Shown here piece after piece: positions 22,228 to 55,725 of a stretch of DNA of 64,000 nt. Below the pieces are notes generated by a model. The model worked only from the letters and a program-made list of their open reading frames with translations. It did no database searches and was not told the origin of the DNA. The DNA is taken from IMG/VR virus record IMGVR_UViG_3300027834_000005, positions 62,001-126,000 of that record. The stretch is one strand, 5' to 3'. Numbering within the stretch: the first letter of the stretch is position 1; each line of letters starts with the position of its first letter. The position numbers and the translations under genes were made by a program.

Positions 22228-22292
22228 GAATGGGAAATATGAATGGCATATTTGAGTGGCATATTTGAATCCCATTATTGAATCTCACCCGT
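22228..22292. repeat. 13-bp-period repeat array, copy 1
   Basis: gaatgggaaatat gaatggcatattt gagtggcatattt gaatcccattatt gaatctcacccgt. Confidence 0.75.
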
Positions 22293-22549
22293 AGAGAGAA
22301 ACCCATATGCATATACATACCCACACACGTATATGGAAACTAATCCTATTAAACATTATTGTTAATGATCCTTGACACTATAGGGAATAAGTTATATAAT
22401 AGATACACAATAAAGAAACGGGATCTCCTCACTTATTCTTATTGTATAGAGCATAGACACATCGCCAGTACCCTTGGATATAATGTCCCCGTAGTACGTG
22501 TCTATGCTCACCACCTATACTGGAATTCATCCCTATACATGTAAGTGGC

Positions 22550-22800
22550 CCTATATACGAAAAACATGGCTATAGCTGAAAATGTATCTATATGGGAAAA
22601 TCATGGCTATAGCTGAAAATGTGTGCTATACTGAAAAAACCATCTATATACGTAATTGTCCCTATAGGGGGAAATCATGGTCAAACTGGAAAGTTGCCCT
22701 ATAGTGGAAAAGTTACCTATAGTGCCCCTTAAGGGGAAATCATAGTCAAATTGGAAAAGTTGGTCAAAACTGAAAATTCCATTTTAGCTGGAAAATTTTT
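22550..22800. repeat. Degenerate ~18-19-bp repeats with phased GAAAA tracts (island left boundary)
   Basis: catggctatagctgaaaatgt at 22565 and 22602; GAAA(A) recurring about every 18-19 bp; non-coding. Confidence 0.7.
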
Positions 22801-22834
22801 ATTGAATGCTAAACGTAATGGTAATACGAATCGT

Positions 22835-22980
22835 AATACGAATCATTCTCATTTGCGCCTGTAAACCGTAATGCGAATCATTCTCATTCTCATCTATAAC
22901 TATCAGGCAGGAGTGGTGTTTATCTCCTCGGTTATCCCAAGCCATGTAAGTATTATACCTATCCTCACGTAGAGTGCAAG
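22835..22980 (-). ncRNA. Non-coding cassette A (promoter, ACACCACTCCTG core, 2 Fur-like boxes)
   Basis: -10 at 22952-22957(-); core 22908-22919; Fur-like boxes 22835-22853 and 22870-22888. Confidence 0.55.
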
Positions 22981-23004
22981 CATTTATTTGATATAATTTC
23001 AGAT

Positions 23005-23023
23005 AGTAATGATAATGATTATC
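23005..23023. promoter_or_regulatory. Fur box
   Basis: AGTAATGATAATGATTATC, 16/19 match to GATAATGATAATCATTATC. Confidence 0.55.
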
Positions 23024-23252
23024 CCTTAGTCTCTGCGATTACTCTAGTGTCGATATTATGCATAATATCGTGAGCGGTGGCAAGGGATATATACACTATT
23101 ACATGAGTACTTGTCCCCATAGTAGTTTTTATATAAGGAGATGATTCTGTATCTTTGGGTATTACCAGAATATTATTCTCATCATGCATACTGCCCGTCA
23201 TAGGTTTGTTGCTGTATACGCGCTCTGTTGATGATTCGTGTAATAGTTTCAT
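23019..23252 (-). CDS. Hypothetical early protein
   Basis: RBS AAGGAG; own promoter (duplicated at 23676-23730). Confidence 0.7.
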   Translation of the reverse strand: MKLLHESSTERVYSNKPMTGSMHDENNILVIPKDTESSPYIKTTMGTSTHVIVYISLATAHDIMHNIDTRVIAETKG

Positions 23253-23315
23253 GGTTATCTCCTTGTCTCTAAGTTGAATATGTAGTATAGTGTATCCATA
23301 TAAGAAGTCAAGGGT

Positions 23316-23501
23316 TTATTCTAAAGAATCATAGTTTAAATTACTGAGGTCGTTTATCACGACTAAGAGCAGAGATAGCTGCGCGTCTATTCTGTTATAG
23401 TTTTGACTACCAGCCCTACACTTACTCAGTCTTATCTCTAAGTTGCTAATTGTTTGGCGATAGTCGTTGATTAGGTCTTGTATAGACATAGACGATTTCA
23501 T
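23316..23501 (-). CDS. Hypothetical early protein
   Basis: ATGA-coupled to upstream gene. Confidence 0.65.
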   Translation of the reverse strand: MKSSMSIQDLINDYRQTISNLEIRLSKCRAGSQNYNRIDAQLSLLLVVINDLSNLNYDSLE

Positions 23502-23665
23502 GATTTAAACCCACTGAATGCTTCTAGTTCTTCTCTGAATGCTCTCTTAGAGTCGTCGTCGTGATACCCTTCATCCATGCCCATGCATATGCCATGATTG
23601 ATACATGCCCATACCATGTTCTTAAGGGCCTCTTGTGCTTCTTCTGATAGTTGGTCGTAGGTCAT
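23498..23665 (-). CDS. Hypothetical early protein
   Basis: Start MTYDQL after AAGGA RBS and promoter. Confidence 0.7.
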   Translation of the reverse strand: MTYDQLSEEAQEALKNMVWACINHGICMGMDEGYHDDDSKRAFREELEAFSGFKS

Positions 23666-23875
23666 GATAATGTCCTTGTCTCTAAGTTGAATATGTAGTA
23701 TAGTGTATCTATATAAGAAGTCAAGGGTTTTATTCAATGTATTTCATATTAGAGGCAATATCTATTATTGTCGTTATAGCATTAGTAACGGCTTTATTAT
23801 GTATTATATGGCTTTAGTTGTTGACACTGTAGTTATGGTGTGTATACTGGGTGTATATTAAATAAGGGGATAGCT

Positions 23876-24205
23876 ATGGCTATTGTAGTTAAGGCAGACC
23901 AGAAACTGTTAGATCGTCTTAAGGACGCTTCTGAACATGATGCTGTATTTGATGAGCTAACAGCTAAGAGTAACGCAATTGATCCTAGTGATAGCATTGT
24001 GGGTGCGTTCCTTGCGTTTTACATGGGTGATGGCTATGCCTATTACTTATGTACTAGCGAATCTCCATTAGAAGTACAGCATATCCCTTTATGGGATGAA
24101 TGGGAGATAAACGTTAAAGGGTTTGATAAGCAATACCTTACGCAGAAAATAGTTAATGAGCGTAGAATTAATGCTCTTAAGTCTAAACAAACCTTGACAT
24201 TGTAG
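23876..24205 (+). CDS. Hypothetical early protein
   Basis: Repeated leader tatactgggtgtatattaaataaggggatagctATG. Confidence 0.75.
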   Translation: MAIVVKADQKLLDRLKDASEHDAVFDELTAKSNAIDPSDSIVGAFLAFYMGDGYAYYLCTSESPLEVQHIPLWDEWEINVKGFDKQYLTQKIVNERRINALKSKQTLTL

Positions 24206-24248
24206 TTATACTCGCTATACTGGGTGTATATTAAATAAGGGGATAGCT

Positions 24249-24572
24249 ATGGCTACCGACATTAAAGTAATACATATGAGTAATACCTCTGGTGGGTATA
24301 ATAACACTACGGTAAAGTCTGCCACGGACAATGTAACGCCTTTAGTGGTTGCTACACGTAAGTATATCATTACCTCTACGTTATTAGAAGCATGTAACAG
24401 TGACTACTCCCCTGTAACGTTTAAGGCTGAAGTATGGAACGATAGGCTATCGGAGTGGAAAGATGTATATTACTTGCATATTACCCATGAGCGTGCTACT
24501 ATGTCTGTGGATGATTTTGTATCTAAGCATACTAAAGAAATAGAAGATATAATGCTTGCTATTTTGTTTTAG
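24249..24572 (+). CDS. Hypothetical early protein
   Basis: Same repeated leader. Confidence 0.75.
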   Translation: MATDIKVIHMSNTSGGYNNTTVKSATDNVTPLVVATRKYIITSTLLEACNSDYSPVTFKAEVWNDRLSEWKDVYYLHITHERATMSVDDFVSKHTKEIEDIMLAILF

Positions 24573-24612
24573 TGGGTTATACTGGGTGTATATTAATTAA
24601 GGGGAGAATCCC

Positions 24613-24801
24613 ATGCCACAGAAAATATCTTTTGGTACAGCCTTGATACTAGGTTTCCTAGGTCATCAGTTCGGTATGTCCGTATTACAGTTAGGTGCTA
24701 TCATTGTATTAGTTGCTGTTATAGCTACGGCTAGTTATGTACAGGGATTGCGTGAAGGTGATAAGATGGGTGCTGGTCGTATTAGACGTGGTGAAGGCTA
24801 A
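24613..24801 (+). CDS. Small membrane protein
   Basis: Two hydrophobic segments. Confidence 0.7.
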   Translation: MPQKISFGTALILGFLGHQFGMSVLQLGAIIVLVAVIATASYVQGLREGDKMGAGRIRRGEG

Positions 24802-24950
24802 TGTCTGATTGTGAACATAGTGATGATGGTGGAAAAACAACGTGTAGTGATATGTATAACTGCTGTAGTTGTGGCGGTAATGATTGTGGCTGTCGCTATT
24901 GTTTTGATTGTAATGCATGTGAAGAATGTTTAGGGGATGATGATGAGTAA
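24801..24950 (+). CDS. Cys-rich metallothionein-like peptide (49 aa)
   Basis: MSDCEHSDDGGKTTCSDMYNCCSCGGNDCGCRYCFDCNACEECLGDDDE; TAATG coupling; below ORF-track cutoff. Confidence 0.65.
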   Translation: MSDCEHSDDGGKTTCSDMYNCCSCGGNDCGCRYCFDCNACEECLGDDDE

Positions 24951-25233
24951 AAGAAAAATGTTATTAGCTGGTGTTATAGCTGCTAGTGTTATGTTAGTGG
25001 GTTGTAATGATGTTATTAGTATATCACCTGAAGCTATAGAACTAGTTGAGCCTGTATGTGATACGAATGATGGTGTGTTTAAATATACCATTGAAGAGAC
25101 TAGTACCTATAACTATGTGTCTGTTACGTGTCTTAACAATGCTAATTTTAATCGTGTGGCGTTTTATAACAGTTCTAATGAACCGGCTTATGCGCCAGTA
25201 TATAAATACTTAGCGGATAAAAAACAAGAATAA
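24937..25233 (+). CDS. Putative lipoprotein
   Basis: Lipobox LVGC after hydrophobic leader. Confidence 0.7.
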   Translation: MMMSKRKMLLAGVIAASVMLVGCNDVISISPEAIELVEPVCDTNDGVFKYTIEETSTYNYVSVTCLNNANFNRVAFYNSSNEPAYAPVYKYLADKKQE

Positions 25234-25246
25234 GGAAAGGGTAGTC

Positions 25247-25354
25247 ATGGAATGGCTTGATTCTATAAGGGATGTTGAATGGTTTATAGGTGCTATCTTA
25301 GTGGCATGTATAGTTGTGCTTGCGAATTACTTCGGGAGAAGTGATGATGATTGA
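25247..25354 (+). CDS. Small membrane peptide
   Basis: MEWLDSIRDVEWFIGAILVACIVVLANYF; paralog of next gene. Confidence 0.55.
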   Translation: MEWLDSIRDVEWFIGAILVACIVVLANYFGRSDDD

Positions 25355-25487
25355 TTGGCTAATGAGCTTGCAAGATGAGCATTGGTTCTTTATAATAATG
25401 GGAACTGTGCTGTTTGTGTTGTTACTTAGTGGCAGTGAGACATTATTTGGCTCTGAGGAGACGCATGACGAGTTTCCTGATGTATAG
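25347..25487 (+). CDS. Small membrane peptide
   Basis: MIDWLMSLQDEHWFFIIMGTVLFVLLL. Confidence 0.55.
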   Translation: MIDWLMSLQDEHWFFIIMGTVLFVLLLSGSETLFGSEETHDEFPDV

Positions 25488-25549
25488 AGGGTGATTGTAT
25501 GCCTGAACGCATAAAAGCCCTTACGGGCTATTGTGGGGCTTCTGAGAGG

Positions 25550-25750
25550 CTACACGACTACATTAGATAAGTCTCTCATGTTATCTAATACATCTTCAAG
25601 GGATTTATGTGGTAGGATGGTTCTATCATCTGCTTGATCTTTTAATCGCATTGATGCTTCTACGCATTCAGCATAGTCTTTACTTTTATGGATAGCAAGT
25701 CCATCATGCATTATCTTATACGCTATCTCTGGTTGTATTGAAGTAGCCAT
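25550..25750 (-). CDS. Hypothetical protein
   Basis: Coupled - strand trio. Confidence 0.65.
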   Translation of the reverse strand: MATSIQPEIAYKIMHDGLAIHKSKDYAECVEASMRLKDQADDRTILPHKSLEDVLDNMRDLSNVVV

Positions 25751-25956
25751 TATGCATTATCCTTGCGGTATTGTTTAAGAGCTTCACTATACATACGTGC
25801 ATAGGTATAGTCAACATTAATGTTAGCAGATTTTTGGAATAGCAGTTCACTTTCATCTTTAGTGCCATACTTCCATGCTTGCACTTGCCATGTGTTTGTG
25901 CTTTCCGCAATCTGTTCAAAGATAATACATACAAATCCAATTCTATAATAAAACAT
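25750..25956 (-). CDS. Hypothetical protein
   Basis: Start MFYYRIG, TAATG coupling. Confidence 0.6.
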   Translation of the reverse strand: MFYYRIGFVCIIFEQIAESTNTWQVQAWKYGTKDESELLFQKSANINVDYTYARMYSEALKQYRKDNA

Positions 25957-26168
25957 TATGCTTCGTCCCATTCTGATAAGTCTTGTGTAGTGCCATCTAA
26001 GAAACCCAATGCATCTTCCAACGTACACTGTACCGTGAGCTTACCATCAAAGCTATTCATGATACGCATTTGTTCTGTAGCTTCTTCTGCGTGCTGCTCA
26101 CCATGGTGCTGAGTTAAGCCAACACGGATAGACACTGCTGATTCTGTATGTTCTCTTGCCTTAGACAT
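25956..26168 (-). CDS. Hypothetical protein
   Basis: RBS AAGGAG, divergent promoter. Confidence 0.7.
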   Translation of the reverse strand: MSKAREHTESAVSIRVGLTQHHGEQHAEEATEQMRIMNSFDGKLTVQCTLEDALGFLDGTTQDLSEWDEA

Positions 26169-26299
26169 GATGTTCTCCTTAGTTATACCACCTATAATAC
26201 CTACTCCTCACTTGTTGTCAACAACTAAATTAAATTAATATATTACTTGACTATGTATAGGGTACGTATATAATGAGAATCAAATTAAAGGAGAACACC

Positions 26300-26527
26300 A
26301 TGAAGCACATATCCGATTTCAATATTACTGAGGGTGACTGTACATTCCCAGACGCCAAAGCTATCCTTGAATATGTAAATGTGCACGGGGTAAACTCTGT
26401 TAGTACTGAAGCATACGAACTTATCTCTTGTGCTGACTGTGGCGCAGAGATGGACGGTGGCTACCCTAACGATTGTTTCGGTACTACTCATGGTTGGTGC
26501 GGTGAATGCGAACAAGAGGAAGACTAA
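26300..26527 (+). CDS. Zn-ribbon-like small protein
   Basis: CADC...CGEC. Confidence 0.7.
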   Translation: MKHISDFNITEGDCTFPDAKAILEYVNVHGVNSVSTEAYELISCADCGAEMDGGYPNDCFGTTHGWCGECEQEED

Positions 26528-26697
26528 TGGACGATCACACAGAACTAAAATGTAACACTTGTAATGATAATACAGGTGTGTATTATCAAGACTGCGGTGC
26601 GCCATTCTATCAAATATTCGTATGTTACTCTTGTAAAGAGAAAGAAGTACGCGAAGAAGAAGAACGCCTTGAAGAGGAAGATGAAGATGAAGAATAA
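26527..26697 (+). CDS. Zn-finger protein with acidic tail
   Basis: CNTC..CYSC; EEEERLEEEDEDEE. Confidence 0.65.
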   Translation: MDDHTELKCNTCNDNTGVYYQDCGAPFYQIFVCYSCKEKEVREEEERLEEEDEDEE

Positions 26698-27007
26698 GAA
26701 ACCAATCGTAGGTATAGTGGGCACAAGTAGCATTGGGCATAGTAGTCTAGTCCGCCACATAGGTCAATCTGTCCCTGTAGTAGTGATAGACGATATCGAT
26801 AAGGCTGACTTCTCTAATGAAGGTCTAGCTAGAAAAACTATCGAAGAGTTCTATACACAATCAGGCGATTGCATAAAGCACACGGTTAATAATTGCCAGC
26901 CATGTAAGGTTAAAGCCGTAGATAGATTATCTCAGCGTATAGACTTACATAGTGTAACGCCTAAAGATATGATGAATGCTTTAGAAAAATATAAACATAA
27001 ACGTTGA
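26687..27007 (+). CDS. Hypothetical protein
   Basis: ORF; start uncertain. Confidence 0.6.
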   Translation: MKNKKPIVGIVGTSSIGHSSLVRHIGQSVPVVVIDDIDKADFSNEGLARKTIEEFYTQSGDCIKHTVNNCQPCKVKAVDRLSQRIDLHSVTPKDMMNALEKYKHKR

Positions 27008-27057
27008 CTTTGTATATGTGCCCTGTATAGTGGGGCATAACTTCTGAGGAGAAGAAC

Positions 27058-27456
27058 ATGTATCTATCCAAAAACGTACAATCAGTTACTATTAGTGTTG
27101 ATCCAGAAGACCTGTACATGTTGACGTTGTTTGCTCGTCACTACTGTTTAGCTAAGCATTACGCGAGATCTAGTGGTAAGCGTAAGAATAAAGTTGAGCG
27201 TTTAATTAACAAGAACAAAAAAGTTATCCAGCGTATTATTGGTGAAACACTGGGGGATAGACTGGTGTTAGATACATTCGCTTGGGAATTTAAGAACAGA
27301 GAAGGATATAAGGGCATATTCAATAAGAGAAGTGTTCATGATGCGTATGACACTGTGTGTCGTTATGAATGGTACATTGTAATCACGTCTGATTTAGCGA
27401 AGCATGGCTATGGTAAACCAAAAAAAGACTTGACTCCTAGCGACACTACTGTATAG
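27058..27456 (+). CDS. Hypothetical early protein
   Basis: Promoter plus GAGGAG RBS. Confidence 0.75.
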   Translation: MYLSKNVQSVTISVDPEDLYMLTLFARHYCLAKHYARSSGKRKNKVERLINKNKKVIQRIIGETLGDRLVLDTFAWEFKNREGYKGIFNKRSVHDAYDTVCRYEWYIVITSDLAKHGYGKPKKDLTPSDTTV

Positions 27457-27481
27457 TGGACTCATCACTAAGGGGAATAGC

Positions 27482-27769
27482 ATGTTATTTAACAATAGAC
27501 GCGGACGTATCCGTGACCATGTAGAAAGTAAAGCTAAGATTATCTCTAAGGCTATTGCTCCTATCAAGGGCGCTAGTGCTATGGAAACGTCTAGTTCTAA
27601 CATTAATGCCTCATCATTCCGCATTTACTGTAAGACTGAAGAGGTAGTTGATCGCGTAGAGAATACATTACGTGGTTTAGCTATTCAGCGTTTGCACACT
27701 AATACCATTCAAGGTACTGGACGTGGCATTGTAGTGTGTGTTACTATTATTACTGATCTTATTCGATAG
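27482..27769 (+). CDS. Hypothetical early protein
   Basis: AAGGGGAA RBS. Confidence 0.7.
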   Translation: MLFNNRRGRIRDHVESKAKIISKAIAPIKGASAMETSSSNINASSFRIYCKTEEVVDRVENTLRGLAIQRLHTNTIQGTGRGIVVCVTIITDLIR

Positions 27770-27777
27770 GTGTAGTT

Positions 27778-28266
27778 ATGCTCAAAGTCATGAAGATGGT
27801 TAAGGTATTGGGGAAAGTACGTGTTCCTTATACTACATACCGTGTACCTTTACTTAAAGGAATCATTGAGGGCACTGTCACTATTGTCAGTGCTGAGTGG
27901 TGTGACCCGTGGAAAACAAAACATTCTGATTTATACGCCAAGCCGAATCTATGTGTTAGCTTTGATGAAAATGGCGAACGTGGTTCATTTAATAATTGGT
28001 GTGCGGTTCAGGATGGCTTTGACTATAAAGTATACCCTGACGGTAAGATAGAAGTAACCAAGTATGAAAGTGGCGGATATCATGGTGGACGTGGTGATAA
28101 GCATTGGGTAGCAGTATTACAGGCTGACCCTAAGATTGTCAAGGAATCATTCGGCTCTAGTATTACCCGTGCATGGCAAAGACATGTAGATGATAAGCTT
28201 TGTGCTATTGAAGAAAAGGAACGTTTGGAACGGCTTAATTCCTTATCTAAACTTTTATTGAAATAG
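27778..28266 (+). CDS. Hypothetical protein
   Basis: 162-aa ORF. Confidence 0.7.
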   Translation: MLKVMKMVKVLGKVRVPYTTYRVPLLKGIIEGTVTIVSAEWCDPWKTKHSDLYAKPNLCVSFDENGERGSFNNWCAVQDGFDYKVYPDGKIEVTKYESGGYHGGRGDKHWVAVLQADPKIVKESFGSSITRAWQRHVDDKLCAIEEKERLERLNSLSKLLLK

Positions 28267-28319
28267 GTTGACACTGCATTCCTCTTAGGTATAATGGATA
28301 CATAACTAAGGGGAACACC

Positions 28320-28742: not shown

Positions 28743-28744
28743 CC

Positions 28745-49047: not shown

Positions 49048-49106
49048 TCACACAGTCCACCATCATACCACACATGTAGTTATCCGCAACATGTTTATTC
49101 ATACAG

Positions 49107-49180: not shown

Positions 49181-49189
49181 GATTTGGTA

Positions 49190-49481: not shown

Positions 49482-50102
49482 ATGAACATTATCTCTTCTT
49501 TGAAAAAAGCAACATTGGCTAAAATCGAATCAGCACAGGCGAATGCAGCCATTACTAAACGCGCAAACGGCGCACGTATCACAGCGGGACAAGTGGCGGC
49601 AATCGCGGCAACTAAGCCAGCACTGGTTAAACTAACACAAGTCACGCCTGTAGCACTAGCAGCAGCCAACAAACAGCGCAACATTGTTAAGGTAGCACAA
49701 ACAGTGTGTATCTTGCCTAATGATTCGGACGTATACACAAGCGCCATTAAGCACACGGCAAAAGGTAGCGCCGAAGATATCGCAGCATATACGCCACGCG
49801 AAAGCAAGTATAATCATTGCGGTAGTGCTTATGCAGCGCTAACACTTAAATCAGATGATAGCAAGGAATATTTATATACAATTCAAGACAATTGTACAAA
49901 ATCTGTACTAGTTGACGCCGACACTGGCACAGTTTTAGAAAAAGCGCAAGTTGCTGAATTAATGACCAAATCAGCAGCCAAAAAATTGCTAGGTGATACC
50001 AGCGCAGAAAAAACCAACAAAACCTTTGACATTGAGCACGATGTATGCGTACGCACAATCAAGATGGAAAATGTTATTAAGATGGAAGAAGTATCCATCT
50101 AA
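49482..50102 (+). CDS. Hypothetical early protein (paralog of 37276..37839)
   Basis: Tandem promoters upstream; shared C-terminal motifs. Confidence 0.8.
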   Translation: MNIISSLKKATLAKIESAQANAAITKRANGARITAGQVAAIAATKPALVKLTQVTPVALAAANKQRNIVKVAQTVCILPNDSDVYTSAIKHTAKGSAEDIAAYTPRESKYNHCGSAYAALTLKSDDSKEYLYTIQDNCTKSVLVDADTGTVLEKAQVAELMTKSAAKKLLGDTSAEKTNKTFDIEHDVCVRTIKMENVIKMEEVSI

Positions 50103-50116
50103 TAGAACGCTAACAC

Positions 50117-50145
50117 AAAAGACTGGCATTGTCCAGTCTTTTTTT
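50117..50145. terminator. Bidirectional terminator
   Basis: aaaagactgg-cattgt-ccagtc followed by T-run; near-copy at 55192-55218. Confidence 0.75.
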
Positions 50146-50147
50146 AT

Positions 50148-50251
50148 ATACGAATGATTCTCAATTGCAAATGATTATCATTCTCATTACCCAAATACCA
50201 TGCAGGAGTGGTGTAAGGTCATTATACTACCAACCACAACAACAACACAAG
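50148..50251 (-). ncRNA. Non-coding cassette D
   Basis: -10 at 50221-50226(-); core 50203-50214; Fur box 50170-50188; runs into the bidirectional terminator. Confidence 0.6.
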
Positions 50252-50374
50252 CTTTATTTCATCTAAATTAAATATAAAAAGAATGAATAAAAAGCTTTAC
50301 ATACTCAGCTCGTTCTATATAATGATTACATCAGCTAAGGGATTACCTCTTAGCACCCTTTGAGAGTATTTGCT

Positions 50375-50926
50375 ATGTCTTCACGTAGAATTAATGTATC
50401 AGTTGAACAGTTAGCCACAGAAGCGAAACAGAACGAATTAGCCCGTGTGGACGCAATTAATGCAACTCGTAACATGCTCAATAAGTTACAGCCCTTAATT
50501 GCTGCGCGTATAGCCAAAGGTATTAAGTTTAAAAACGACGGTAGCCCATACGCTAAAGACGCCAAAGATATTGCCGCTATCGTAGCCAATGCGGTTGGTG
50601 GTGAAAAAATACATGTTATGGTAATGTATAAAGAAATCCCTAACCCAATTAGACCTATTCCTTCGACTATACGCATACAGGCAAGGGCGCACTATAGCAA
50701 AATTAGCTCAATATATAACGACTTGAACGGAAAACCGGACGTAAGCGGCCAGAGCTGCGAGGAAAATGCCTATGTGGGTGTTGCTGAGTCTTTCGAGTAC
50801 AAAGATAAACCGCTTTTATCAGTGGATCAAGTAGTAAAGGCTAAAGCCAGAATCACAGAAATAGACGACCTGATAAGTGCATTAAATGGCGAGCGTTCCG
50901 CACTTGCGCACTCTATTGATCTTTAA
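50375..50926 (+). CDS. Hypothetical early protein
   Basis: Family-2 promoter. Confidence 0.75.
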   Translation: MSSRRINVSVEQLATEAKQNELARVDAINATRNMLNKLQPLIAARIAKGIKFKNDGSPYAKDAKDIAAIVANAVGGEKIHVMVMYKEIPNPIRPIPSTIRIQARAHYSKISSIYNDLNGKPDVSGQSCEENAYVGVAESFEYKDKPLLSVDQVVKAKARITEIDDLISALNGERSALAHSIDL

Positions 50927-51018
50927 TACACATTAATACTTTACATACTCAGCTAGTTCTGTATAATGATTACATCAGCTAGGGGATTGTCCCCTAGCAC
51001 CTTTTAAGAGTATTTGCC

Positions 51019-51312
51019 ATGACTACTGTCGCTGCTATTGCCACCGCTACGCCTAAAGATATGATGATAAAACATGTTAACTTTTGTTTCCCTGTCGCTT
51101 GTGCCCGTGATGGACAAGATTTCTTTAAGCACGCATCAGACACTATACACTTAAACTCTAAAAATGTCATCTTGAAGTTTACGCCGTTGTATGATAGCAA
51201 GACGCGCACTGTCGAGAAAGTATTCGATAACTTTCTAAAAAGCCACGGGTGGTACTTAGAAGCGTACACGGTAACAGAACTAATCTTAAGAAAACGCATA
51301 ACACACAATTAA
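51019..51312 (+). CDS. Hypothetical early protein
   Basis: Family-2 promoter. Confidence 0.7.
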   Translation: MTTVAAIATATPKDMMIKHVNFCFPVACARDGQDFFKHASDTIHLNSKNVILKFTPLYDSKTRTVEKVFDNFLKSHGWYLEAYTVTELILRKRITHN

Positions 51313-51321
51313 ACCGTTCTA

Positions 51322-51337
51322 TGTTTCACGTGAAACA
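51322..51337. promoter_or_regulatory. parS site
   Basis: TGTTTCACGTGAAACA, perfect consensus. Confidence 0.85.
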
Positions 51338-51357
51338 TTACCCACTATATGTGGGTA

Positions 51358-51439
51358 AATGCGTATCATTCTCATTAAGTAAATAGCGGACAGGAGTGGT
51401 GTAAGGTCATTATACTACCAACCGCAACAACAACACAAG
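51358..51439 (-). ncRNA. Non-coding cassette E
   Basis: -10 at 51409-51414(-); core 51391-51402; Fur-like box 51358-51376; parS follows. Confidence 0.6.
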
Positions 51440-51528
51440 CTTTTTCTTTATTATCTTTTTGCACAATAAAGCTTTACATACTCAGCTAGATCTGTATAAT
51501 TCAGTAATGTTTATAAGGTTCTATGTGT

Positions 51529-51939
51529 ATGAAAACTACAGACAAGCAAACAAATATATCAGGTTTTTGGCGTATGTGCGCGAGCATCATATTTGACGTT
51601 GTTGCGCACGACGGTGGCGGCTTATCATACTCTTATTACCACGGCAGACAGTTAAGGTCTGGATGTATGCATGATCCTAAGCTATTCACGCAGAATTACA
51701 CACAGTTTAACGTAGATAGCGCAGAAAAAGACCTTGAAGCATTTATTAATGTATTCAATACTTTACATGCTGCCAATGACGCGCTAACAGAGGAAAAACA
51801 ATTTATATTTGATAAAGTTGACACACTAATAACTTTACTGTATAGGGCAGGCGTGGATTATGATGGTGTTACACTAGACATTGACTATAGAAAAGACCAC
51901 CCAACGTATAGCAGAAATAGTAAGTTTTCTTTTCAATAA
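51529..51939 (+). CDS. Hypothetical early protein
   Basis: Family-2 promoter. Confidence 0.7.
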   Translation: MKTTDKQTNISGFWRMCASIIFDVVAHDGGGLSYSYYHGRQLRSGCMHDPKLFTQNYTQFNVDSAEKDLEAFINVFNTLHAANDALTEEKQFIFDKVDTLITLLYRAGVDYDGVTLDIDYRKDHPTYSRNSKFSFQ

Positions 51940-52021
51940 AGCTTTACATACTCAGCTAGATCTGTATAATTGTTAACAAGTCGGGGGCATACAGCAACCG
52001 ACACAGTTTAGAGTATTTGTT

Positions 52022-52399
52022 ATGACTTTTTCTATCGTTAGTTCTACTGCAAAAACCATCTTCACCCCTAGTGCATCTACTCCGCGCCATGAACACGACT
52101 GCGACTGTTGTACATTTACTGGTACTTACGGCGACTATGATCTTTATCATTGCCCTAAGAGCGATGAGGGCACGATCATAGCACGTTTCGGCATTGATGG
52201 CGATTACTATAGCCGCCCGTTATCCTTATGTAAAAGTTCAATGAGCTGTGATCATCCATTGTCTGCCGCCCTTGCTGCATATAAGGAGCACACAGAACAA
52301 CCCGTAACAATTGGCGATCTTATCAAGCGACAAATGGACGAGTCAACCTTTAAAGAAGAACATCTAGCGCATTTTAATAAATGTCTTAATAGGGAATAA
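52022..52399 (+). CDS. His/Cys-motif hypothetical protein
   Basis: PRHEHDCDCC..DLYHC. Confidence 0.75.
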   Translation: MTFSIVSSTAKTIFTPSASTPRHEHDCDCCTFTGTYGDYDLYHCPKSDEGTIIARFGIDGDYYSRPLSLCKSSMSCDHPLSAALAAYKEHTEQPVTIGDLIKRQMDESTFKEEHLAHFNKCLNRE

Positions 52400-52486
52400 A
52401 AACCCTTTACATACTCAGCTAGTTCTGTATAATTGTTAACAAGTCGGGGGCATACAGCAACCGACACCTTTTTGAGAGTATTTACC

Positions 52487-52663
52487 ATGGCTACATTAGT
52501 TGCTGCGAAACAAGTTAAAGCTGGCGATCTTATCATGGACAAGGGCACAAAGCGACAAGTGTCTATGGTTCGCGTATCAGGTGGCGGCGTCGATATCTAT
52601 TGTGTATGTGGCGAGCATTTAGACAAGATAGCCGATCAACAAGTATCATTGGTGGAGGTGTAA
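52487..52663 (+). CDS. Small hypothetical protein
   Basis: Family-2 leader. Confidence 0.65.
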   Translation: MATLVAAKQVKAGDLIMDKGTKRQVSMVRVSGGGVDIYCVCGEHLDKIADQQVSLVEV

Positions 52664-52665
52664 TC

Positions 52666-52857
52666 ATGGCTAGTGTATACGGTGTTAATAGTCCTCGTAG
52701 TGGTCACATAGATGTAAGCAATACGGAACGTGGTGCAAAGAACTACGCAACGCGCAACGGCTACACAGAAGTAACAGAGCGCAACACAAATCACATGACG
52801 GCTATTATCATAGCTGAAAAACATGATGGTATGTGGTGCAAACCTTATTCATTATAG
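52666..52857 (+). CDS. Small hypothetical protein
   Basis: GGAGG RBS. Confidence 0.65.
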   Translation: MASVYGVNSPRSGHIDVSNTERGAKNYATRNGYTEVTERNTNHMTAIIIAEKHDGMWCKPYSL

Positions 52858-52943
52858 TAGTTGACATACTCAGTCAGTTCTATATAATTGTTAACAAGTC
52901 GGGGGCATACAGCAACCGACACAAATCAAAAACGGGATTTATC

Positions 52944-53198
52944 ATGGCTTCATACAAACTTTCTACTATTGCCGCTATCTACGCACTACAACAAGCCATC
53001 GTTGCCGATAAAGCACCTTGCACCCTAACGCAACATTACTTTGCCAAGCAAGTGGTACAGATTGCCGAGCAAGTAGATAACGAGTTTATCATTGATACGC
53101 CTTTAGAGGAAGTCAAAGCAAGCGTTCAATGCGCGTATGATTTTGCTAAGGTTGTGGCGGATAGTGGCGGCCTTGTATACACTCAGGCGAGTGTATAA
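52944..53198 (+). CDS. Small hypothetical protein
   Basis: Family-2 leader. Confidence 0.65.
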   Translation: MASYKLSTIAAIYALQQAIVADKAPCTLTQHYFAKQVVQIAEQVDNEFIIDTPLEEVKASVQCAYDFAKVVADSGGLVYTQASV

Positions 53199-53269
53199 CT
53201 ATGGCTATCACGTTATCAGTTATCATGGTTCTTTCTTTTCCTTTAGTCTTTAGCCTGTAGGGGTTTATT

Positions 53270-53614
53270 ATGCTATTAGTCATTAATGCACTAGAACAAG
53301 TCAAAAGCGGCACTGATGGCGCGGCCACTATAATCTCTCATATTAACGCGCACCCACTCAAAGCGCTTATTGCTGAAGGGCTTTATGAAAAGGTACGGGA
53401 ACGCGATAACATAGCAGATAAACGCTATTCATTACAGGCACGCCGTAAAAAGGCCGACAAGTACACAAACACCGACGCTATGGATAAAGACATAGAAGCG
53501 TTAGGGTTGCAAGAAGATGCCCTAGATGGCGATATAGAGGCCATAGTGCATGAATCTAAGAAAATGCTAAACTTTGAAATTGCATTGATTGTAAACGAAT
53601 TCTCAAAATATTAA
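53270..53614 (+). CDS. Hypothetical coiled-coil protein
   Basis: 114-aa ORF. Confidence 0.65.
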   Translation: MLLVINALEQVKSGTDGAATIISHINAHPLKALIAEGLYEKVRERDNIADKRYSLQARRKKADKYTNTDAMDKDIEALGLQEDALDGDIEAIVHESKKMLNFEIALIVNEFSKY

Positions 53615-53632
53615 ATAAGCCTTTGGGGGGAC

Positions 53633-53711
53633 TTGTGTCCCCTCTTTTTTTGTGTATAATAGAACCACACCACTCCTGCCTGCTATTCCACTAATGAGAA
53701 TGATTATCATT
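53633..53711 (+). ncRNA. Non-coding cassette F
   Basis: TTGTGT-N16-TATAAT; core 53667-53678 at predicted +1; Fur box AATGAGAATGATTATCATT at 53693-53711. Confidence 0.6.
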
Positions 53712-53716
53712 CACAC

Positions 53717-53732
53717 TGTTCCACGTGAAACA
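53717..53732. promoter_or_regulatory. parS site
   Basis: TGTTCCACGTGAAACA fits TGTTNCACGTGAAACA. Confidence 0.8.
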
Positions 53733-53756
53733 TAAACTAACACGCAATCAACTCTA

Positions 53757-53878
53757 AATGAGAATGATTCCCAACAACTGATAGCAGACAGGAGTAGTGT
53801 TTGCCTCCTAGCTCCGCAGCTAGCCCCAATCCCTTATCTCTTAATACCTATTATAATGATCTGAATACATAACGCAAG
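53757..53878 (-). ncRNA. Non-coding cassette G (converges on F)
   Basis: -10 at 53850-53855(-); core 53789-53800; partial Fur-like box at 53757. Confidence 0.55.
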
Positions 53879-54116
53879 CATTATTTCACCTAAATTAAAT
53901 ACAAAATTAGATGATTATATAGTTGACACTAACAGCAGAATGATTAATAATAGCTTCACTGTTTAGGCAAGCCCTAACAGCGCTAAAACAGATATGAAAT
54001 TATCTGAAAATAAAACAAGTAATCGCTTGACTCTATAATCACTAAGCGATACTATATAACAACTGAAACCAATAACGAGTTTCGGACAAAGCCCCAAAGG
54101 GGCAAAGGCTATTATT

Positions 54117-55172
54117 ATGAATACTTCTACTCCTTCAAACGTTGTTTCTCTTTTCTCTAAAACTTCTGCCGCTGTAGCTGTTACTACTGCCGCCGTGGAC
54201 TATGCGCCTGTACGTCAAGAGGCACGCGAGAACGGTCTGTCTACGCCTAACTGGAACGTTCCTACATGTAAGCGTGAAGATATCGGCCTAACGTTACATG
54301 CTCAGCTAGACGCTAAAGGCGTGTTCTATACTGTTGATGGCCGTGATAACTTCGTACAGAATAATGCGGGTGAATTTGTAAGCACTGGCTCGAAAACTAT
54401 CTACAATGAAACGAATGAAAAAACTCTTGGCGTTATGTCTAAAGGTTATGAGATTGTCCAGAATGAAAACATCTTCACTTCTCTTTTTGCAGAGATTGAA
54501 CGTGCTGGCCTAGACGTCTCTAATGCCTTCACACGCGTTAGAATGGATAACGACGGTCAAAGAGTAATGGCGGAAATCATCTTTCCAGAAACATCGTTCG
54601 ACGTCGCTGTAGGTGATACCGTCGCCTTGTCTATCACTGCAATCAATAGCTTTGATGGTAGTGGCGCTTTTCACCTTAAAATGGGCGCGTTTCGTTTCAT
54701 CTGTGCTAACGGTATGGTATCAGCTAACGGTATCATTGAGTATAAGCACCAACACAGCAAAGGCTTAAGCGCTTCAAGTGCTGCTAAGCATATCGCTAAC
54801 GGCATGACTCAATATAATGAAGACAAAGAGTCTTTATTAGAACAAGCCAACACACAAGTAAACGCGCAAGATGTTTATGAAGCGTTAGCAATCATGAACA
54901 AAATTGATACTAAACTAGCGCCAACCTATGAGCAATACCAGCTTGTTATTCGCCCAACACTTAAACGTGAGCCAGCTATAGAGCGTCATATGGGCTTATG
55001 GAATAAGTACAAGGCAGAGCTAGGCAATACCCAATGGGCACTTAACAACGTGCTAACGCATATCAGCACACATGGCGACAAGCCAGAGTATACAGCAGAT
55101 CAAAACATTACTACCCGCTCAGGCAAAGAGAAGTTAGTAGGTGTTGCACTACGTAACATGTTAGCGGCATAA
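54117..55172 (+). CDS. DUF932/DUF945-family protein
   Basis: LGVMSKGYEIVQNE, NSFDGS, GAFRFICANG, TQWALNNVLTH. Confidence 0.8.
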   Translation: MNTSTPSNVVSLFSKTSAAVAVTTAAVDYAPVRQEARENGLSTPNWNVPTCKREDIGLTLHAQLDAKGVFYTVDGRDNFVQNNAGEFVSTGSKTIYNETNEKTLGVMSKGYEIVQNENIFTSLFAEIERAGLDVSNAFTRVRMDNDGQRVMAEIIFPETSFDVAVGDTVALSITAINSFDGSGAFHLKMGAFRFICANGMVSANGIIEYKHQHSKGLSASSAAKHIANGMTQYNEDKESLLEQANTQVNAQDVYEALAIMNKIDTKLAPTYEQYQLVIRPTLKREPAIERHMGLWNKYKAELGNTQWALNNVLTHISTHGDKPEYTADQNITTRSGKEKLVGVALRNMLAA

Positions 55173-55234
55173 GCCCTAACACCTAACACGATAAGGCTGG
55201 CATTGTCCAGCCTTTTTTACGTCTATTGTAATAG

Positions 55235-55554
55235 TTATCCACACCCTGTGCATAACCTGTTAGTAATACTTATCCCCTACCTTATCCACAATCCTATAGT
55301 TATCCACAACCACTGCGCTATTATAGTGCACGACCATGCACCATAGGGGGGCACCCCCCTACCCCTGCCCCTATGCACACGGGTGGCGGCATGTCAAGGG
55401 ATAACTTATGCACAATTGTACACAGAGTTACACACAATATAGCGGTTTTAGCGAAAGTCAAGGGATAACTAGCACTATTTCTGTGCATAAGCCTGTGGAT
55501 AAGAAAAAATAGTTATCACCAGGGGTCCTGTGTATATGTATAACCTGTGGATAA
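55235..55554. promoter_or_regulatory. Cluster of DnaA boxes
   Basis: TTATCCACA at 55235, 55282, 55300, 55494(-), 55546(-); TTATGCACA at 55247(-), 55406, 55482(-); further 1-mismatch boxes. Confidence 0.85.
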
Positions 55555-55652
55555 CTTAGGGGCGACCTAGCCAGCGGCCCAATTTTTTTGCCCCCAGACC
55601 CCCCCCATGGTAAAAATTTTTCCCAGAAAATTTTCCGACCCTCCTACCCCCC

Positions 55653-55725
55653 AACCCTCGGTAAACCCTTGGTGAACCCTTGGTAAACCCTTGGGCGACG
55701 TAGTCGCTACCCTCGGTAAACCTTG
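55653..55725. repeat. 11-bp direct repeats (island right boundary)
   Basis: aaccctcggta aacccttggtg aacccttggta aacccttgggc, preceded by C-runs and A/T tracts. Confidence 0.7.

What the first reader, a model, noticed from the sequence alone, without database searches (positions are those of the whole stretch)
22228..55725. Host-chromosome mimicry: the early island is seeded with parS, DnaA, LexA, Fur and KOPS sites
Seen, all intergenic: 3 canonical parS, 8 consensus DnaA boxes in 320 bp, 4 tandem SOS boxes, about 9 Fur-like boxes and 2 overlapping KOPS. They often abut one another (parS next to Fur at 41.4, 51.3 and 53.7 kb; SOS array next to Fur at 49.1 kb). No ParB, LexA, Fur or DnaA gene is in the window. 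Known: these are the recognition sequences of the host partition, replication-initiation, SOS, iron and FtsK systems. Inference: a non-coding cis-acting module that recruits or titrates host proteins. It could coat and protect incoming DNA, pull or position it via ParAB/SMC, or sponge regulators to stall host replication and derepress SOS and iron uptake as genome copy number rises. The combination looks undescribed to me.
Basis: partly seen in the sequence, partly recalled or inferred. Interest (0 to 1): 0.92.

Follow-up and report, generated by a model that had tools for sequence, protein, structure and literature searches.

The report
Host-type DNA sites in huge-phage early region
The early-gene region of a 347-kb uncultured phage really does carry binding sequences for the host's chromosome-partition protein ParB and replication initiator DnaA, plus an iron-regulator-like palindrome, but smaller phages (phi29, T5) already show the same trick.

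Summary
Three exact canonical parS sites, eight DnaA boxes in 320 bp, and 8-13 copies of a 19-bp Fur-like palindrome are far above chance. All are non-coding and all lie in 22.2-55.7 kb. The "SOS boxes" are an 18-bp tandem repeat matching the LexA consensus at 16/20 (CTGG, not CTGT). It varies in copy number between strains and is absent from a collinear relative. The two KOPS are chance.

The window belongs to a 347-kb PA5oct-related huge phage. The island is its early region, transcribed by host sigma-70 RNA polymerase, and sits where PA5oct has its 39-kb terminal repeat. The DnaA boxes form 3-bp-spaced pairs inside inverted repeats, as in phage T5's injection-stop region. The array recurs in a 71%-identical relative. 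A perfect parS recurs in a 47% relative. A 68% relative has another motif at the orthologous spot.

The Fur-like palindrome equals a published Xanthomonas Fur consensus. However, it is always fused to a second conserved box, and a variant fills PA5oct's terminal repeat, so a phage-encoded binder remains possible.

No cognate protein gene lies in the window; the other 283 kb was not examined. Verdict: new variant of a known kind. Sponge reading untested.

The parts
22190..55706 (+). Early-gene island. It holds about 85 small ORFan genes, most with their own sigma-70-type promoter and terminator, plus two tRNA genes. It sits where PA5oct has its 39-kb direct terminal repeat / early region.
   Evidence: Consensus promoters and repeated promoter cassettes. 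tRNAs. Synteny of the adjoining structural block with PA5oct. PA5oct terminal-repeat biology (PMC7318152).
41387..41402 (.). parS 1 (TGTTTCACGTGAAACA). It starts 8 nt after the stop codon of ORF 41122-41379 and lies 5 nt before a Fur-like palindrome.
51322..51337 (.). parS 2 (TGTTTCACGTGAAACA). It starts 10 nt after the stop codon of ORF 51019-51312 and lies 20 nt before a Fur-like palindrome.
53717..53732 (.). parS 3 (TGTTCCACGTGAAACA), flanked by two inverted copies of the palindrome+box module. In the collinear relative L009 this exact position holds ACCGTTCGTCGG instead.
55235..55554 (.). DnaA-box array: 5 TTATCCACA and 3 TTATGCACA, plus weaker variants. The left set is on the + strand and the right set on the - strand, forming inverted repeats. 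Pairs with a 3-bp gap lie at 55235/55247 and 55482/55494, and a pair with a 2-bp gap at 55535/55546.
55173..55706 (.). 534-bp untranslated region between the convergent early (+) and structural (-) gene blocks. It contains a terminator, the DnaA array, C-rich tracts and short T-tracts. Its right half is homologous in relatives L136, L135 and L009.
55653..55727 (+). Iteron-like repeats AACCCTYGGTRAACCCTTGG: three copies at 11-bp spacing and a fourth 33 bp further on.
22835..22888 (+). Two Fur-like palindromes (22835-22853 and 22870-22888), followed by the box at 22908.
41408..41450 (+). Fur-like palindrome (41408-41426) plus box CAGGAGTAGTG (41440-41450).
49190..49245 (+). Fur-like hexamer run / palindrome (49190-49221) plus box (49235-49245). 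It is orthologous to the L009 module at 4843-4889.
50147..50213 (+). Two Fur-like palindromes (50147-50165 and 50170-50188) plus box (50203-50213).
51358..51401 (+). Fur-like palindrome (51358-51376) plus box (51391-51401).
53668..53711 (-). Inverted module: box (53668-53678, - strand) plus Fur-like palindrome (53693-53711). It is orthologous to L009 8434-8478.
53757..53799 (+). Fur-like half-palindrome (53757-53775) plus box (53789-53799).
49101..49180 (+). 18-bp tandem repeat ATACAGTACTGGTTGGAT, 4 copies. It can be read as four overlapping LexA-like sites (CTGG-N8-ACAG, 16/20 to consensus). One 99.8%-identical assembly has 2 copies, and the array is absent from L009.
55357..55370 (-). Two overlapping GGGNAGGG matches inside a C-rich tract. 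They are at chance level and are not treated as KOPS.
22190..23120 (.). About 0.9 kb of untranslated DNA at the left edge of the island, holding several repeat families. It is a possible second boundary element.

Best explanation
The island is the early region of a 347-kb huge phage related to PA5oct, transcribed by host RNA polymerase. It is probably the first DNA to act in the cell. Its non-coding DNA carries landing sites for DNA-binding proteins the host already has at time zero.

(1) DnaA array. A 320-bp array of eight DnaA boxes sits in the large untranslated region at the early/structural boundary. The boxes form 3-bp-spaced pairs inside inverted repeats, the same architecture as the injection-stop region of phage T5's first-step-transfer DNA. 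I infer that it binds host DnaA. Binding would hold or anchor the DNA at this boundary, or alternatively start replication there.

(2) parS sites. Three canonical parS sites lie in the last 14 kb before that array. I infer that they load host ParB, which would spread over this end of the island. ParB would position or segregate the phage genome when lysis is delayed, as phi29 does with host Spo0J.

(3) Fur-type palindrome. A lineage-conserved 19-bp Fur-type palindrome is always joined at 13-15 nt to a second conserved box. It sits about 105-160 bp upstream of strong early promoters. It is a regulatory operator, bound by host Fur (my slight preference) or by a phage protein.

Shown versus inferred: the sequences, their statistics, their architecture and their recurrence in relatives are shown. 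Every protein-DNA contact and every physiological role is inferred. The SOS-like repeat and the KOPS are not part of the system.
For: - Exact consensus sites far above chance, all non-coding and all confined to the island.
- The palindrome+box module occurs nowhere else in the 347-kb genome copy held in IMG/VR.
- No ParB, Fur, LexA or DnaA domain is found in any window gene.
- The island is full of consensus sigma-70 promoters, so host RNA polymerase reads it.
- The adjoining structural genes are syntenic with PA5oct. There, the equivalent small-gene block is the 39-kb terminal repeat, transcribed early by host RNA polymerase.
- The DnaA array has 3-bp-spaced pairs and inverted-repeat arms. 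The same holds in the annotated T5 injection-stop region and in relative L136, which has three perfect boxes and a pair-to-pair spacing of 53 bp, as in the window.
- The untranslated region itself is homologous in four relatives.
- A perfect parS (TGTTCCACGTGGAACA) occurs in the 7.3-kb contig of a 47%-identical relative.
- Phi29-like contigs in IMG/VR carry 3-4 canonical parS sites, matching the published use of host Spo0J by phi29.
- The palindrome consensus equals a published Xanthomonas Fur-box consensus.
- In orthologous intergenic regions of L009, the palindrome and box are the only strongly conserved block.
Against: - About 283 kb of the genome was not examined, so a phage-encoded ParB or other cognate protein is not excluded.
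- The host is unknown, so it is not known whether it has ParAB-parS or an E. coli-type LexA.
- parS and the DnaA boxes are missing from some relatives. At the orthologous positions, L009 and L135 carry ACCGTTCGTCGG instead.
- The first 69.5 kb of PA5oct has neither parS nor a DnaA array.
- A variant of the palindrome (AATAAGAATwATTCTTATT) occurs 11 times in PA5oct's terminal repeat. It has no match to the E. coli-type Fur 19-mer at up to 4 mismatches, which fits a phage-encoded binder.
- The palindromes do not overlap the -35/-10 of the downstream promoters, which is not the usual Fur repression geometry.
- The untranslated region has no marked AT-rich unwinding element and no GATC cluster.
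- Terminal-repeat status of the island was not tested.
Confidence: 0.45

Rival explanations
1. The sites belong to phage-encoded proteins. A ParB-family protein encoded elsewhere in the 347-kb genome would bind parS, as in plasmid prophages or RK2 KorB. A phage regulator conserved in the PA5oct lineage would bind the Fur-like palindrome and/or the adjoining box, for example to shut off early genes.
For: - The palindrome family is present in PA5oct's terminal repeat in a form that departs from the Fur consensus.
- The palindrome is always coupled to a phage-specific box at fixed spacing and in either orientation.
- Relatives carry a different, unknown motif (ACCGTTCGTCGG) exactly where parS or the DnaA boxes sit. 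That looks like a swap between cognate protein-site pairs.
- Most of the genome is unexamined.
Against: - The parS sites are the exact chromosomal consensus, whereas plasmid and phage partition systems usually use private sites.
- No ParB, HTH-regulator or Fur domain is found in about 170 window genes.
- The PA5oct paper does not mention ParB at all.
- Phi29 shows that a phage without parB can use host-type parS.
Confidence: 0.25
2. Plasmid-like replicon. The DnaA boxes plus the 11-bp iterons would form a theta-type origin and the three parS sites its centromere. The phage would then persist as a low-copy episome (plasmid prophage or stable carrier state) replicated with host DnaA and partitioned by host ParAB.
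For: - DnaA boxes lie next to iteron-like repeats.
- parS sites lie within 1.5-14 kb of the array, as around bacterial origins.
- The non-coding region is conserved in relatives.
- From my own knowledge: a chromosomal parS stabilises an unstable plasmid in B. subtilis (Lin and Grossman 1998), and P1 oriR combines DnaA boxes with iterons.
Against: - There is no clear AT-rich unwinding element and no GATC cluster.
- No Rep-like gene is recognisable next to the iterons.
- Both gene blocks converge on the site, so forks leaving it would meet transcription head-on.
- T5 carries a comparable array that its author argues is not an origin.
- No integrase or repressor is seen in the window.
Confidence: 0.15
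3. As the genome copy number rises, the sites would titrate ParB, DnaA, Fur and LexA. This would stall host replication and segregation and derepress the iron and SOS regulons.
For: - The sites are real and multiple.
- From my own knowledge: extra parS copies and datA-like DnaA-box clusters perturb bacteria when amplified.
Against: - There are only 3 parS sites and 8 DnaA boxes per genome.
- The palindromes sit at fixed spacing to another conserved element and at a regular distance from promoters, which a sponge does not need.
- The LexA-like sites are weak and not conserved.
- Sites differ between close relatives.
- No computation here bears on titration.
Confidence: 0.1
4. Chance or repeat by-product with no function.
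For: - This holds for two sub-claims. KOPS occur 3 times against 1.9 expected.
- The SOS-like reading rests on one 18-bp unit amplified by slippage. It has 4 copies in one strain and 2 in another, and is absent in L009.
- Several palindrome copies are paralogous duplicates of whole promoter cassettes.
Against: - Three exact 16-mers against 0.000 expected, and 8 boxes in 320 bp against a simulated maximum of 3.
- The sites recur in relatives whose flanks have diverged.
Confidence: 0.03

Closest known systems
Bacillus phage phi29: five parS sites for host Spo0J (ParB) plus Spo0A boxes (PMC2731898)
   Same: - A virulent phage carries the host's canonical chromosomal parS together with binding sites for a host regulator near its early promoters.
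- The phage has no parB of its own.
- Phi29-like contigs in IMG/VR carry 3-4 exact parS sites.
   Different: - Phi29 is a 19-kb protein-primed podovirus of a sporulating Gram-positive host, and its sites serve spore entrapment.
- Here the phage is a 347-kb myovirus-type phage of an unknown, probably proteobacterial, host.
- The partner sites are DnaA boxes and a Fur-type palindrome.
- Host binding is not shown.
Phage T5 injection-stop signal in the left terminal repeat / first-step-transfer DNA (bioRxiv 10.1101/866236; NC_005859 9140-10149)
   Same: - About eight DnaA or DnaA-like boxes lie in a large untranslated region at the inner end of the early, host-transcribed DNA.
- The boxes come in pairs 3 bp apart and lie in inverted repeats.
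- Pair-to-pair spacing is about five helical turns: 61 bp in T5 and 53 bp here and in L136.
   Different: - T5's role for DnaA is itself only a hypothesis.
- The boxes here are mostly perfect consensus, whereas T5's are mostly variants.
- The inverted-repeat arms here are 171-280 nt apart, not 52.
- Terminal-repeat status and two-step injection are untested here.
- There is no sequence homology.
Pseudomonas jumbo phage PA5oct, 39-kb direct terminal repeat with early genes (PMC7318152; MK797984)
   Same: - The structural block is homologous and syntenic: a giant ~3900-aa protein, a 225-aa protein at 41.6% identity, and a tail pin.
- A converging block of small early ORFans is read by host RNA polymerase.
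- A 19-bp palindrome family (AATAAGAATwATTCTTATT, 11 copies) is confined to that block and sits after terminators.
   Different: - The first 69.5 kb of PA5oct has no parS and no DnaA array.
- It lacks the CAGGAGTRGTG box.
- Its palindrome departs further from the Fur consensus.
CtrA-binding-site clusters in Alphaproteobacteria phages, 'lytic deferment' (PMC9437464)
   Same: Lytic phages concentrate binding sites for a host master regulator in intergenic or promoter regions of one genome segment. The pattern evolved repeatedly and is read as sensing of the host's state.
   Different: The regulator and the hosts differ. In that work, binding and regulation were shown experimentally; here nothing has been tested.
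Dispersed ParB-family operator sites on replicons: RK2 KorB OB sites and N15 scattered centromeres (from my own knowledge)
   Same: Several ParB-type sites are scattered in intergenic regulatory regions, next to a second operator, and may combine partition with transcriptional control.
   Different: Those elements encode their own ParB-family protein and use private site sequences. Here the sites are the chromosomal consensus, and no such gene has been seen so far.
Fur boxes of Proteobacteria (Xanthomonas consensus AATGAgAATcATTctCATT, PMC1790865)
   Same: The 19-bp 9-1-9 palindrome is the same. Copies in relative L009 match 17-19 of 19 positions and window copies 15-17 of 19.
   Different: - The palindromes do not overlap the promoter hexamers.
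- They are always attached to a phage-specific box.
- The core is GAATnATTC rather than the TAATnATTA shared by Fur-family boxes.
- The downstream genes show no link to iron.

Membership tests
Canonical chromosomal parS (ParB loading site) | 16-bp palindrome matching TGTTNCACGTGAAACA | tested here: met
   Three exact matches; 0.000 expected by chance.
Canonical chromosomal parS (ParB loading site) | A cognate ParB is present in the cell (host or phage) and binds the site | not testable with these tools
   The host is unknown. There is no ParB domain in the window genes. 283 kb of the phage genome was not examined.
Canonical chromosomal parS (ParB loading site) | Site kept in related genomes | tested here: inconclusive
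   A perfect TGTTCCACGTGGAACA occurs in L137, a 47% relative. At the orthologous spot in L009, a 68% relative, the site is replaced by ACCGTTCGTCGG.
phi29-type use of host ParB and host regulator | A phage lacking parB carries host-type parS plus host-regulator sites at early promoters | tested here: inconclusive
   The window part is met. The whole genome was not checked. The palindromes lie 105-160 bp upstream of the promoters rather than on them.
T5-type injection-stop DnaA-box array | About 8 DnaA or DnaA-like boxes in a large untranslated region | tested here: met
   Eight boxes in 320 bp of a 534-bp untranslated region.
T5-type injection-stop DnaA-box array | Boxes in pairs separated by 3 bp, lying in inverted repeats | tested here: met
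   Pairs lie at 55235/55247 and 55482/55494, and at 1289/1301 in L136. Inverted-repeat arms I1, I2, I4 and I6 are present. T5 was checked the same way.
T5-type injection-stop DnaA-box array | Lies at the inner end of a terminal repeat that enters first; injection pauses there | not testable with these tools
   Only positional equivalence to PA5oct's terminal repeat is available. No reads were at hand to map termini or coverage.
DnaA-dependent replication origin (oriC or iteron-plasmid type) | Cluster of DnaA boxes | tested here: met
DnaA-dependent replication origin (oriC or iteron-plasmid type) | Adjacent AT-rich unwinding element (and, in E. coli-type origins, a GATC cluster) | tested here: not met
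   The least stable 30-mers reach only about the 95th percentile of the window, and there is 1 GATC.
DnaA-dependent replication origin (oriC or iteron-plasmid type) | Iterons with a neighbouring initiator (Rep) gene | tested here: inconclusive
   There are four iteron-like repeats at 11-bp spacing. The neighbouring ORFs have no Pfam or PHROG match.
Fur box | 19-bp palindrome matching a Fur consensus | tested here: met
   Eight sites lie within 3 mismatches of the Xanthomonas consensus, and eight within 4 mismatches of the E. coli 19-mer.
Fur box | Overlaps the -35/-10 or transcription start of the regulated promoter | tested here: not met
   Palindrome centres lie 106-157 bp upstream of the next -35. 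Only one half-site, at 49426-49444, overlaps a -10.
Fur box | The motif follows the host's Fur specificity rather than the phage lineage | tested here: inconclusive
   The PA5oct variant (host P. aeruginosa) has 0 matches to the E. coli-type 19-mer at up to 4 mismatches. The first 50 kb of XacN1 (host Xanthomonas) has no such palindrome.
LexA (SOS) box, gammaproteobacterial type | CTGT-N8-ACAG with an AT-rich spacer | tested here: not met
   The sites read CTGG-N8-ACAG with spacer TTGGATAT, a 16/20 match. No canonical box occurs in the island.
LexA (SOS) box, gammaproteobacterial type | Conserved and placed on a promoter | tested here: not met
   The array is an insertion absent from collinear L009. 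One assembly has 4 copies and another 2. No promoter was called on it.
KOPS (FtsK-orienting sequences) | Many skewed, strand-biased copies pointing to dif | tested here: not met
   There are three copies in 64 kb against 1.9 expected. The two overlapping ones lie in a C-rich tract.

The most novel reading that the evidence does not exclude
The early region would be a mimic of a chromosome's origin domain that works entirely with host proteins before any phage protein exists. Membrane-associated DnaA would catch the paired-box array and pause or anchor the entering DNA at the early/late boundary, a T5-like two-step entry in a huge phage. ParB clamps loaded at the three parS sites would coat, protect or position this DNA. 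The conserved scaffolds would be landing pads, into which each phage lineage plugs the site for whichever DNA-binding protein serves it there: parS in one relative, ACCGTTCGTCGG in another, at the same position.
Probability: 0.15. Interest if true: 0.85.

Novelty: new variant of a known kind. Interest (0 to 1): 0.58.

Why it matters
Huge phages are known almost only from metagenomes, and how they enter, persist and time their infection is open. If host ParB and DnaA act on this early region, two strategies known from small model phages would extend to 350-kb phages of Gram-negative hosts. These are phi29's hitch-hiking on the host segregation machinery and T5's DnaA-box injection-stop region.

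It would also give a sequence signature for finding such phages and guessing their lifestyle: paired DnaA boxes at the early/late boundary, chromosomal parS nearby, and a lineage-conserved palindrome.

The palindrome is shared with PA5oct, which is cultured, so that part of the question can be tested directly in the laboratory.

Tried and rejected
- No near match in the INPHARED phage collection.
- Rfam found only the two tRNAs, so the module is no known RNA.
- Consensus folding of the long module variants gave only a weak 7-bp hairpin (-3.4 kcal/mol) with one covarying pair. An RNA element is therefore not supported.
- Sigma-70, sigma-54 and extracytoplasmic-sigma readings of the box CAGGAGTRGTG did not fit all copies (reasoned). 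A reverse-strand promoter (TTGCTA-16-TATAAT) is convincing only at 41488-41515 and in one L009 copy.
- Relatives were sought with the DUF932 protein and its alignment. IMG/VR returned only the same phage. The metagenome scan gave two distant short contigs without any of the motifs. The genome collection gave only the MAG contig already held.
- A 14-base scan for a conserved block of the untranslated region returned only chance hits.
parS could therefore not be counted genome-wide.
- Pfam and PHROG searches of the genes beside the sites found ORFans only.
- Literature searches for sample or assembly accessions gave nothing useful.
- No sequence table was found from which to compute a LexA heterology index. 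The LexA match is therefore given only as 16/20.
- The first 50 kb of XacN1 was checked as a host-specificity test of the palindrome. It has none, so the test was uninformative.
- The 410-kb JGI contig exceeds the 347-kb assemblies by 63 kb. That excess lies 62-125 kb to the right of the window (arithmetic). It says nothing about the island being a terminal repeat.

Full report
WHAT THE WINDOW IS

The window is identical to part of a 410,284-bp JGI metagenome contig. It is 99.76% identical to a 347,153-bp ENA contig. The same genome is also held as a 347,232-bp IMG/VR contig and as NCBI assembly GCA_902730825.1, 347,087 bp. It is therefore a ~347-kb huge phage. It has no close match among deposited phage genomes.

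Genes to the right of 55.7 kb, on the minus strand, are structural. One is tail-fibre-like. One is a 225-aa protein 41.6% identical to PA5oct EST35_0126, and next to it lies a ~3,999-aa giant protein. The gene order matches that of Pseudomonas jumbo phage PA5oct.

In PA5oct, the block of small genes that converges on this structural block is the 39,080-bp direct terminal repeat. It holds 105 genes that are transcribed early by host RNA polymerase (PMC7318152).

In the window, the corresponding block is the island at 22.2-55.7 kb:
- It holds about 85 small ORFan genes.
- It has many consensus sigma-70 promoters in repeated cassettes.
- It has two tRNA genes.

I did not test whether the island is itself a terminal repeat.

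CHECK OF THE OBSERVATION

parS. Three exact canonical sites lie at 41387, 51322 and 53717. No degenerate copies occur at up to 3 mismatches. The expectation is 0.000 in 300 Markov-1 simulations.

DnaA boxes. Five TTATCCACA and three TTATGCACA lie in 55235-55554. That is 8 in 320 bp, against a simulated maximum of 3.

Fur-like boxes. Eight sites lie within 3 mismatches of AATGAGAATnATTCTCATT (0.06 expected), and 13 lie within 4 mismatches. All are in the island and all are intergenic.

SOS boxes. These are an 18-bp tandem repeat of 4 copies at 49101-49180.
- Each junction reads TACTGGTTGGATATACAGTA, a 16/20 match to the LexA consensus, with CTGG in place of CTGT.
- No canonical CTGT-N8-ACAG lies in the island.
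- The ENA strain has 2 copies instead of 4.
- The array is an insertion that is absent from the collinear relative L009.

KOPS. There are three GGGNAGGG in 64 kb against 1.9 expected, which is chance.

Adjacency. The parS-to-palindrome gaps are 5, 20 and 5 nt, and the gap from the repeat array to the palindrome is 9 nt.

Cognate genes. No window gene carries a ParB, Fur, LexA or DnaA domain.

THE FUR-LIKE BOXES ARE HALF OF A LARGER ELEMENT

Each palindrome is followed, after 13-15 nt, by a second conserved box, (A)TAGCrGrCAGGAGTrGTGT. After that comes a -10-like YATTATAC, at a short or a long distance. There are seven such modules, and one is inverted.

With the search pattern used, the module occurs nowhere else in the 347-kb genome.

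The palindrome centres lie 106-157 bp upstream of the -35 of the next strong promoter. This is not the usual Fur repression geometry.

The consensus, seen most clearly in relative L009, is AATGAGAATnATTCTCATT. This is letter for letter the Fur-box consensus derived for Xanthomonas campestris. That study reports it as 84% identical to the Shewanella and Bacillus Fur consensus sequences (PMC1790865).

Between the window and L009, the palindrome and box form the only strongly conserved block in the orthologous intergenic regions.

Against a simple host-Fur reading:
- PA5oct's terminal repeat holds 11 copies of a variant, AATAAGAATwATTCTTATT.
- Those copies also sit after terminators, and none lies in the next 30 kb.
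- PA5oct shows no match to the E. coli-type Fur 19-mer at up to 4 mismatches.

The palindrome is therefore an old cis element of this phage lineage. Host Fur, which is conserved across Proteobacteria, and a conserved phage protein both remain possible binders. I slightly prefer Fur.

I could not assign the box to any promoter class or RNA family.

THE DnaA ARRAY

The array lies in a 534-bp untranslated region between the converging early and structural blocks.

Its layout is as follows:
- The left boxes are on the plus strand and the right boxes on the minus strand, and they form inverted-repeat arms.
- Two pairs are separated by exactly 3 bp (55235/55247 and 55482/55494). A further pair is separated by 2 bp.
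- To the right lie C-rich tracts, short T-tracts and four iteron-like repeats at 11-bp spacing.

The right half of this region is homologous in relatives L136, L135 and L009. L136, whose DUF932 protein is 71% identical, has three perfect boxes. These include a 3-bp-spaced pair, and the pair-to-pair spacing is the same 53 bp as in the window. L135 and L009 lack the boxes.

The region has no marked AT-rich unwinding element and only one GATC.

The closest described structure is the injection-stop region of T5-like phages. It is a large untranslated stretch at the inner end of the first-entering terminal repeat, with about eight DnaA or DnaA-like boxes, always in pairs 3 bp apart and lying in inverted repeats (bioRxiv 10.1101/866236). 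I verified the paired layout on the annotated T5 record: TTATCCCCA-3-TTATCAACA, then 40 bp, then TTATCAACA-3-TTATCCACA.

That author argues the T5 boxes are not an origin and proposes capture by membrane-bound DnaA. This proposal is itself untested.

parS IN RELATIVES AND IN OTHER PHAGES

- L137 (47% DUF932 identity, a 7.3-kb contig) has five copies of the box and one perfect parS, TGTTCCACGTGGAACA. It also has two near-copies placed just before terminators.
- L009 is collinear with window 45.4-55.2 kb. Exactly where parS 3 sits, it carries ACCGTTCGTCGG. This motif is repeated 6-7 times in L009 and is also present in L136 and L135, but it is absent from the window.
- Sites are therefore exchanged on a conserved scaffold.
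The multi-site contigs I examined are phi29-like, carrying the Gp16 ATPase and the connector protein.
- This agrees with the literature. Phi29 carries five parS sites bound by host Spo0J plus Spo0A boxes, which together trap its genome in the spore and suppress the lytic cycle (PMC2731898).
- Clusters of host CtrA sites in phages of Alphaproteobacteria are a second precedent for host-regulator sites in lytic phages (PMC9437464).

MECHANISM AND CONFIDENCE

Shown:
- The sites exist and are non-random.
- They are confined to the early island and sit on conserved non-coding scaffolds.
- They recur in some relatives.
- No cognate gene lies in the window.

Inferred:
- Host DnaA binds the paired-box array at the early/late boundary. 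It would either hold or anchor the DNA there, as proposed for T5, or start replication.
- Host ParB loads at the three parS sites in the last 14 kb before the array and organises or segregates the genome, as in phi29.
- The palindrome is an operator, for Fur or for a phage protein, that works together with the adjoining box.

I give this 0.45. The rivals are:
- phage-encoded cognate proteins, 0.25
- a plasmid-like origin plus centromere, 0.15
- chance, 0.03; chance does apply to the KOPS and largely to the SOS reading

The main gaps are the 283 kb of genome I could not examine, the unknown host, and the untested position of the genome ends.

NOVELTY

The principle that lytic phages carry host ParB, DnaA or regulator sites is known from phi29, T5 and the CtrA phages. 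My literature searches found no description of three things:
- canonical parS combined with a T5-like paired DnaA-box array and a lineage-conserved Fur-type palindrome in a huge phage
- the swapping of sites at orthologous positions between relatives
- the palindrome family shared with PA5oct

I rate this as a new variant of a known kind, with interest 0.58.

Noticed in passing
window 30167-48750 (e.g. 36119-36183, 40614-40678, 48684-48748): A repeated early-promoter cassette occurs 9-12 times. It reads TTGACA, a 10-12-bp inverted repeat straddling the -10 (TGTGTAACCATGCTATTATGGTTACACA), then a conserved leader GTTCTGAGGGGAAC and ATG. The inverted repeat looks like an operator for a shut-off repressor.
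   Followed up: partly
window 22908, 41440, 49235, 50203, 51391, 53668(-), 53789; L009 4879, 5773, 7607(-), 8445(-); L137 900, 2742, 3652, 4328, 5204: The box CAGG[A/C/G]GT[A/G]GTG, with its flanks, is the most conserved non-coding element of this phage clade. In L137 its upstream partner is not the Fur-like palindrome but TTGTCAAGCCnnACCTnAAACAyGG. Its function is unknown: it fits no Rfam family, no convincing fold and no promoter class.
   Followed up: partly
L009 4935, 8482, 8517, 8552, 9800, 9837; L136 15, 52, 1275; L135 1257, 1373: The motif (AAACT)ACCGTTCGTCGG is repeated in the intergenic DNA of three relatives, often 12-13 nt after a TTGACA. It occupies the positions where the window has parS or DnaA boxes. 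It is absent from the window, and its binding factor is unknown.
   Followed up: partly
window 22230-22287, 40786-40856, 48517-48574: A second operator-like palindrome, AAATGCCATTTTT..AAAAATGGCATT, lies directly upstream of a -35 TTGAMT. There are three copies.
   Followed up: no
window 22190-23120: About 0.9 kb of untranslated DNA at the left edge of the island holds several direct-repeat families (for example GGGAAAATCATGGCTATAGCTGAAAATG). Just right of it (about 23.1-23.7 kb) lie two small minus-strand genes with near-identical promoters. This stretch could be the other boundary of a terminal repeat.
   Followed up: no
window 55894-55953: A 12-bp tandem repeat, ACTTTAGTGGAT, occurs 4 times inside the minus-strand ORF 55707-56477, next to the untranslated region. 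It would encode a repeated tetrapeptide.
   Followed up: no
L041 2657-3444 (IMGVR_UViG_3300037189_030872): Five exact parS sites lie within about 800 bp, a few hundred bp from an Sf6-type small terminase gene in an unrelated viral contig. This is a possible use of parS-like sites near a packaging gene.
   Followed up: no
L008 2500-2660 and 11040-12135: The 33%-GC relative has three 47-bp tandem repeats just upstream of its two Fur-like palindromes. It also has 1.1 kb of untranslated DNA after its DUF932 gene, with GGGGCTATATA repeats and long T-tracts but no DnaA boxes.
   Followed up: partly
L264 (XacN1) 2889-19648: TTATACACA occurs 11 times in 17 kb of the early small-gene block of XacN1, and it is the only TTATNCACA variant found there. 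It may be promoter-related. It warns that DnaA-like 9-mers can have other meanings.
   Followed up: no
window 54117-55172 and island genes 31989-32468, 44757-45380: The island encodes DUF932, RadC-like and Mom-like proteins. From my own knowledge, these domains are typical of anti-restriction / leading-region gene sets of plasmids and prophages, which is consistent with an early take-over role.
   Followed up: no
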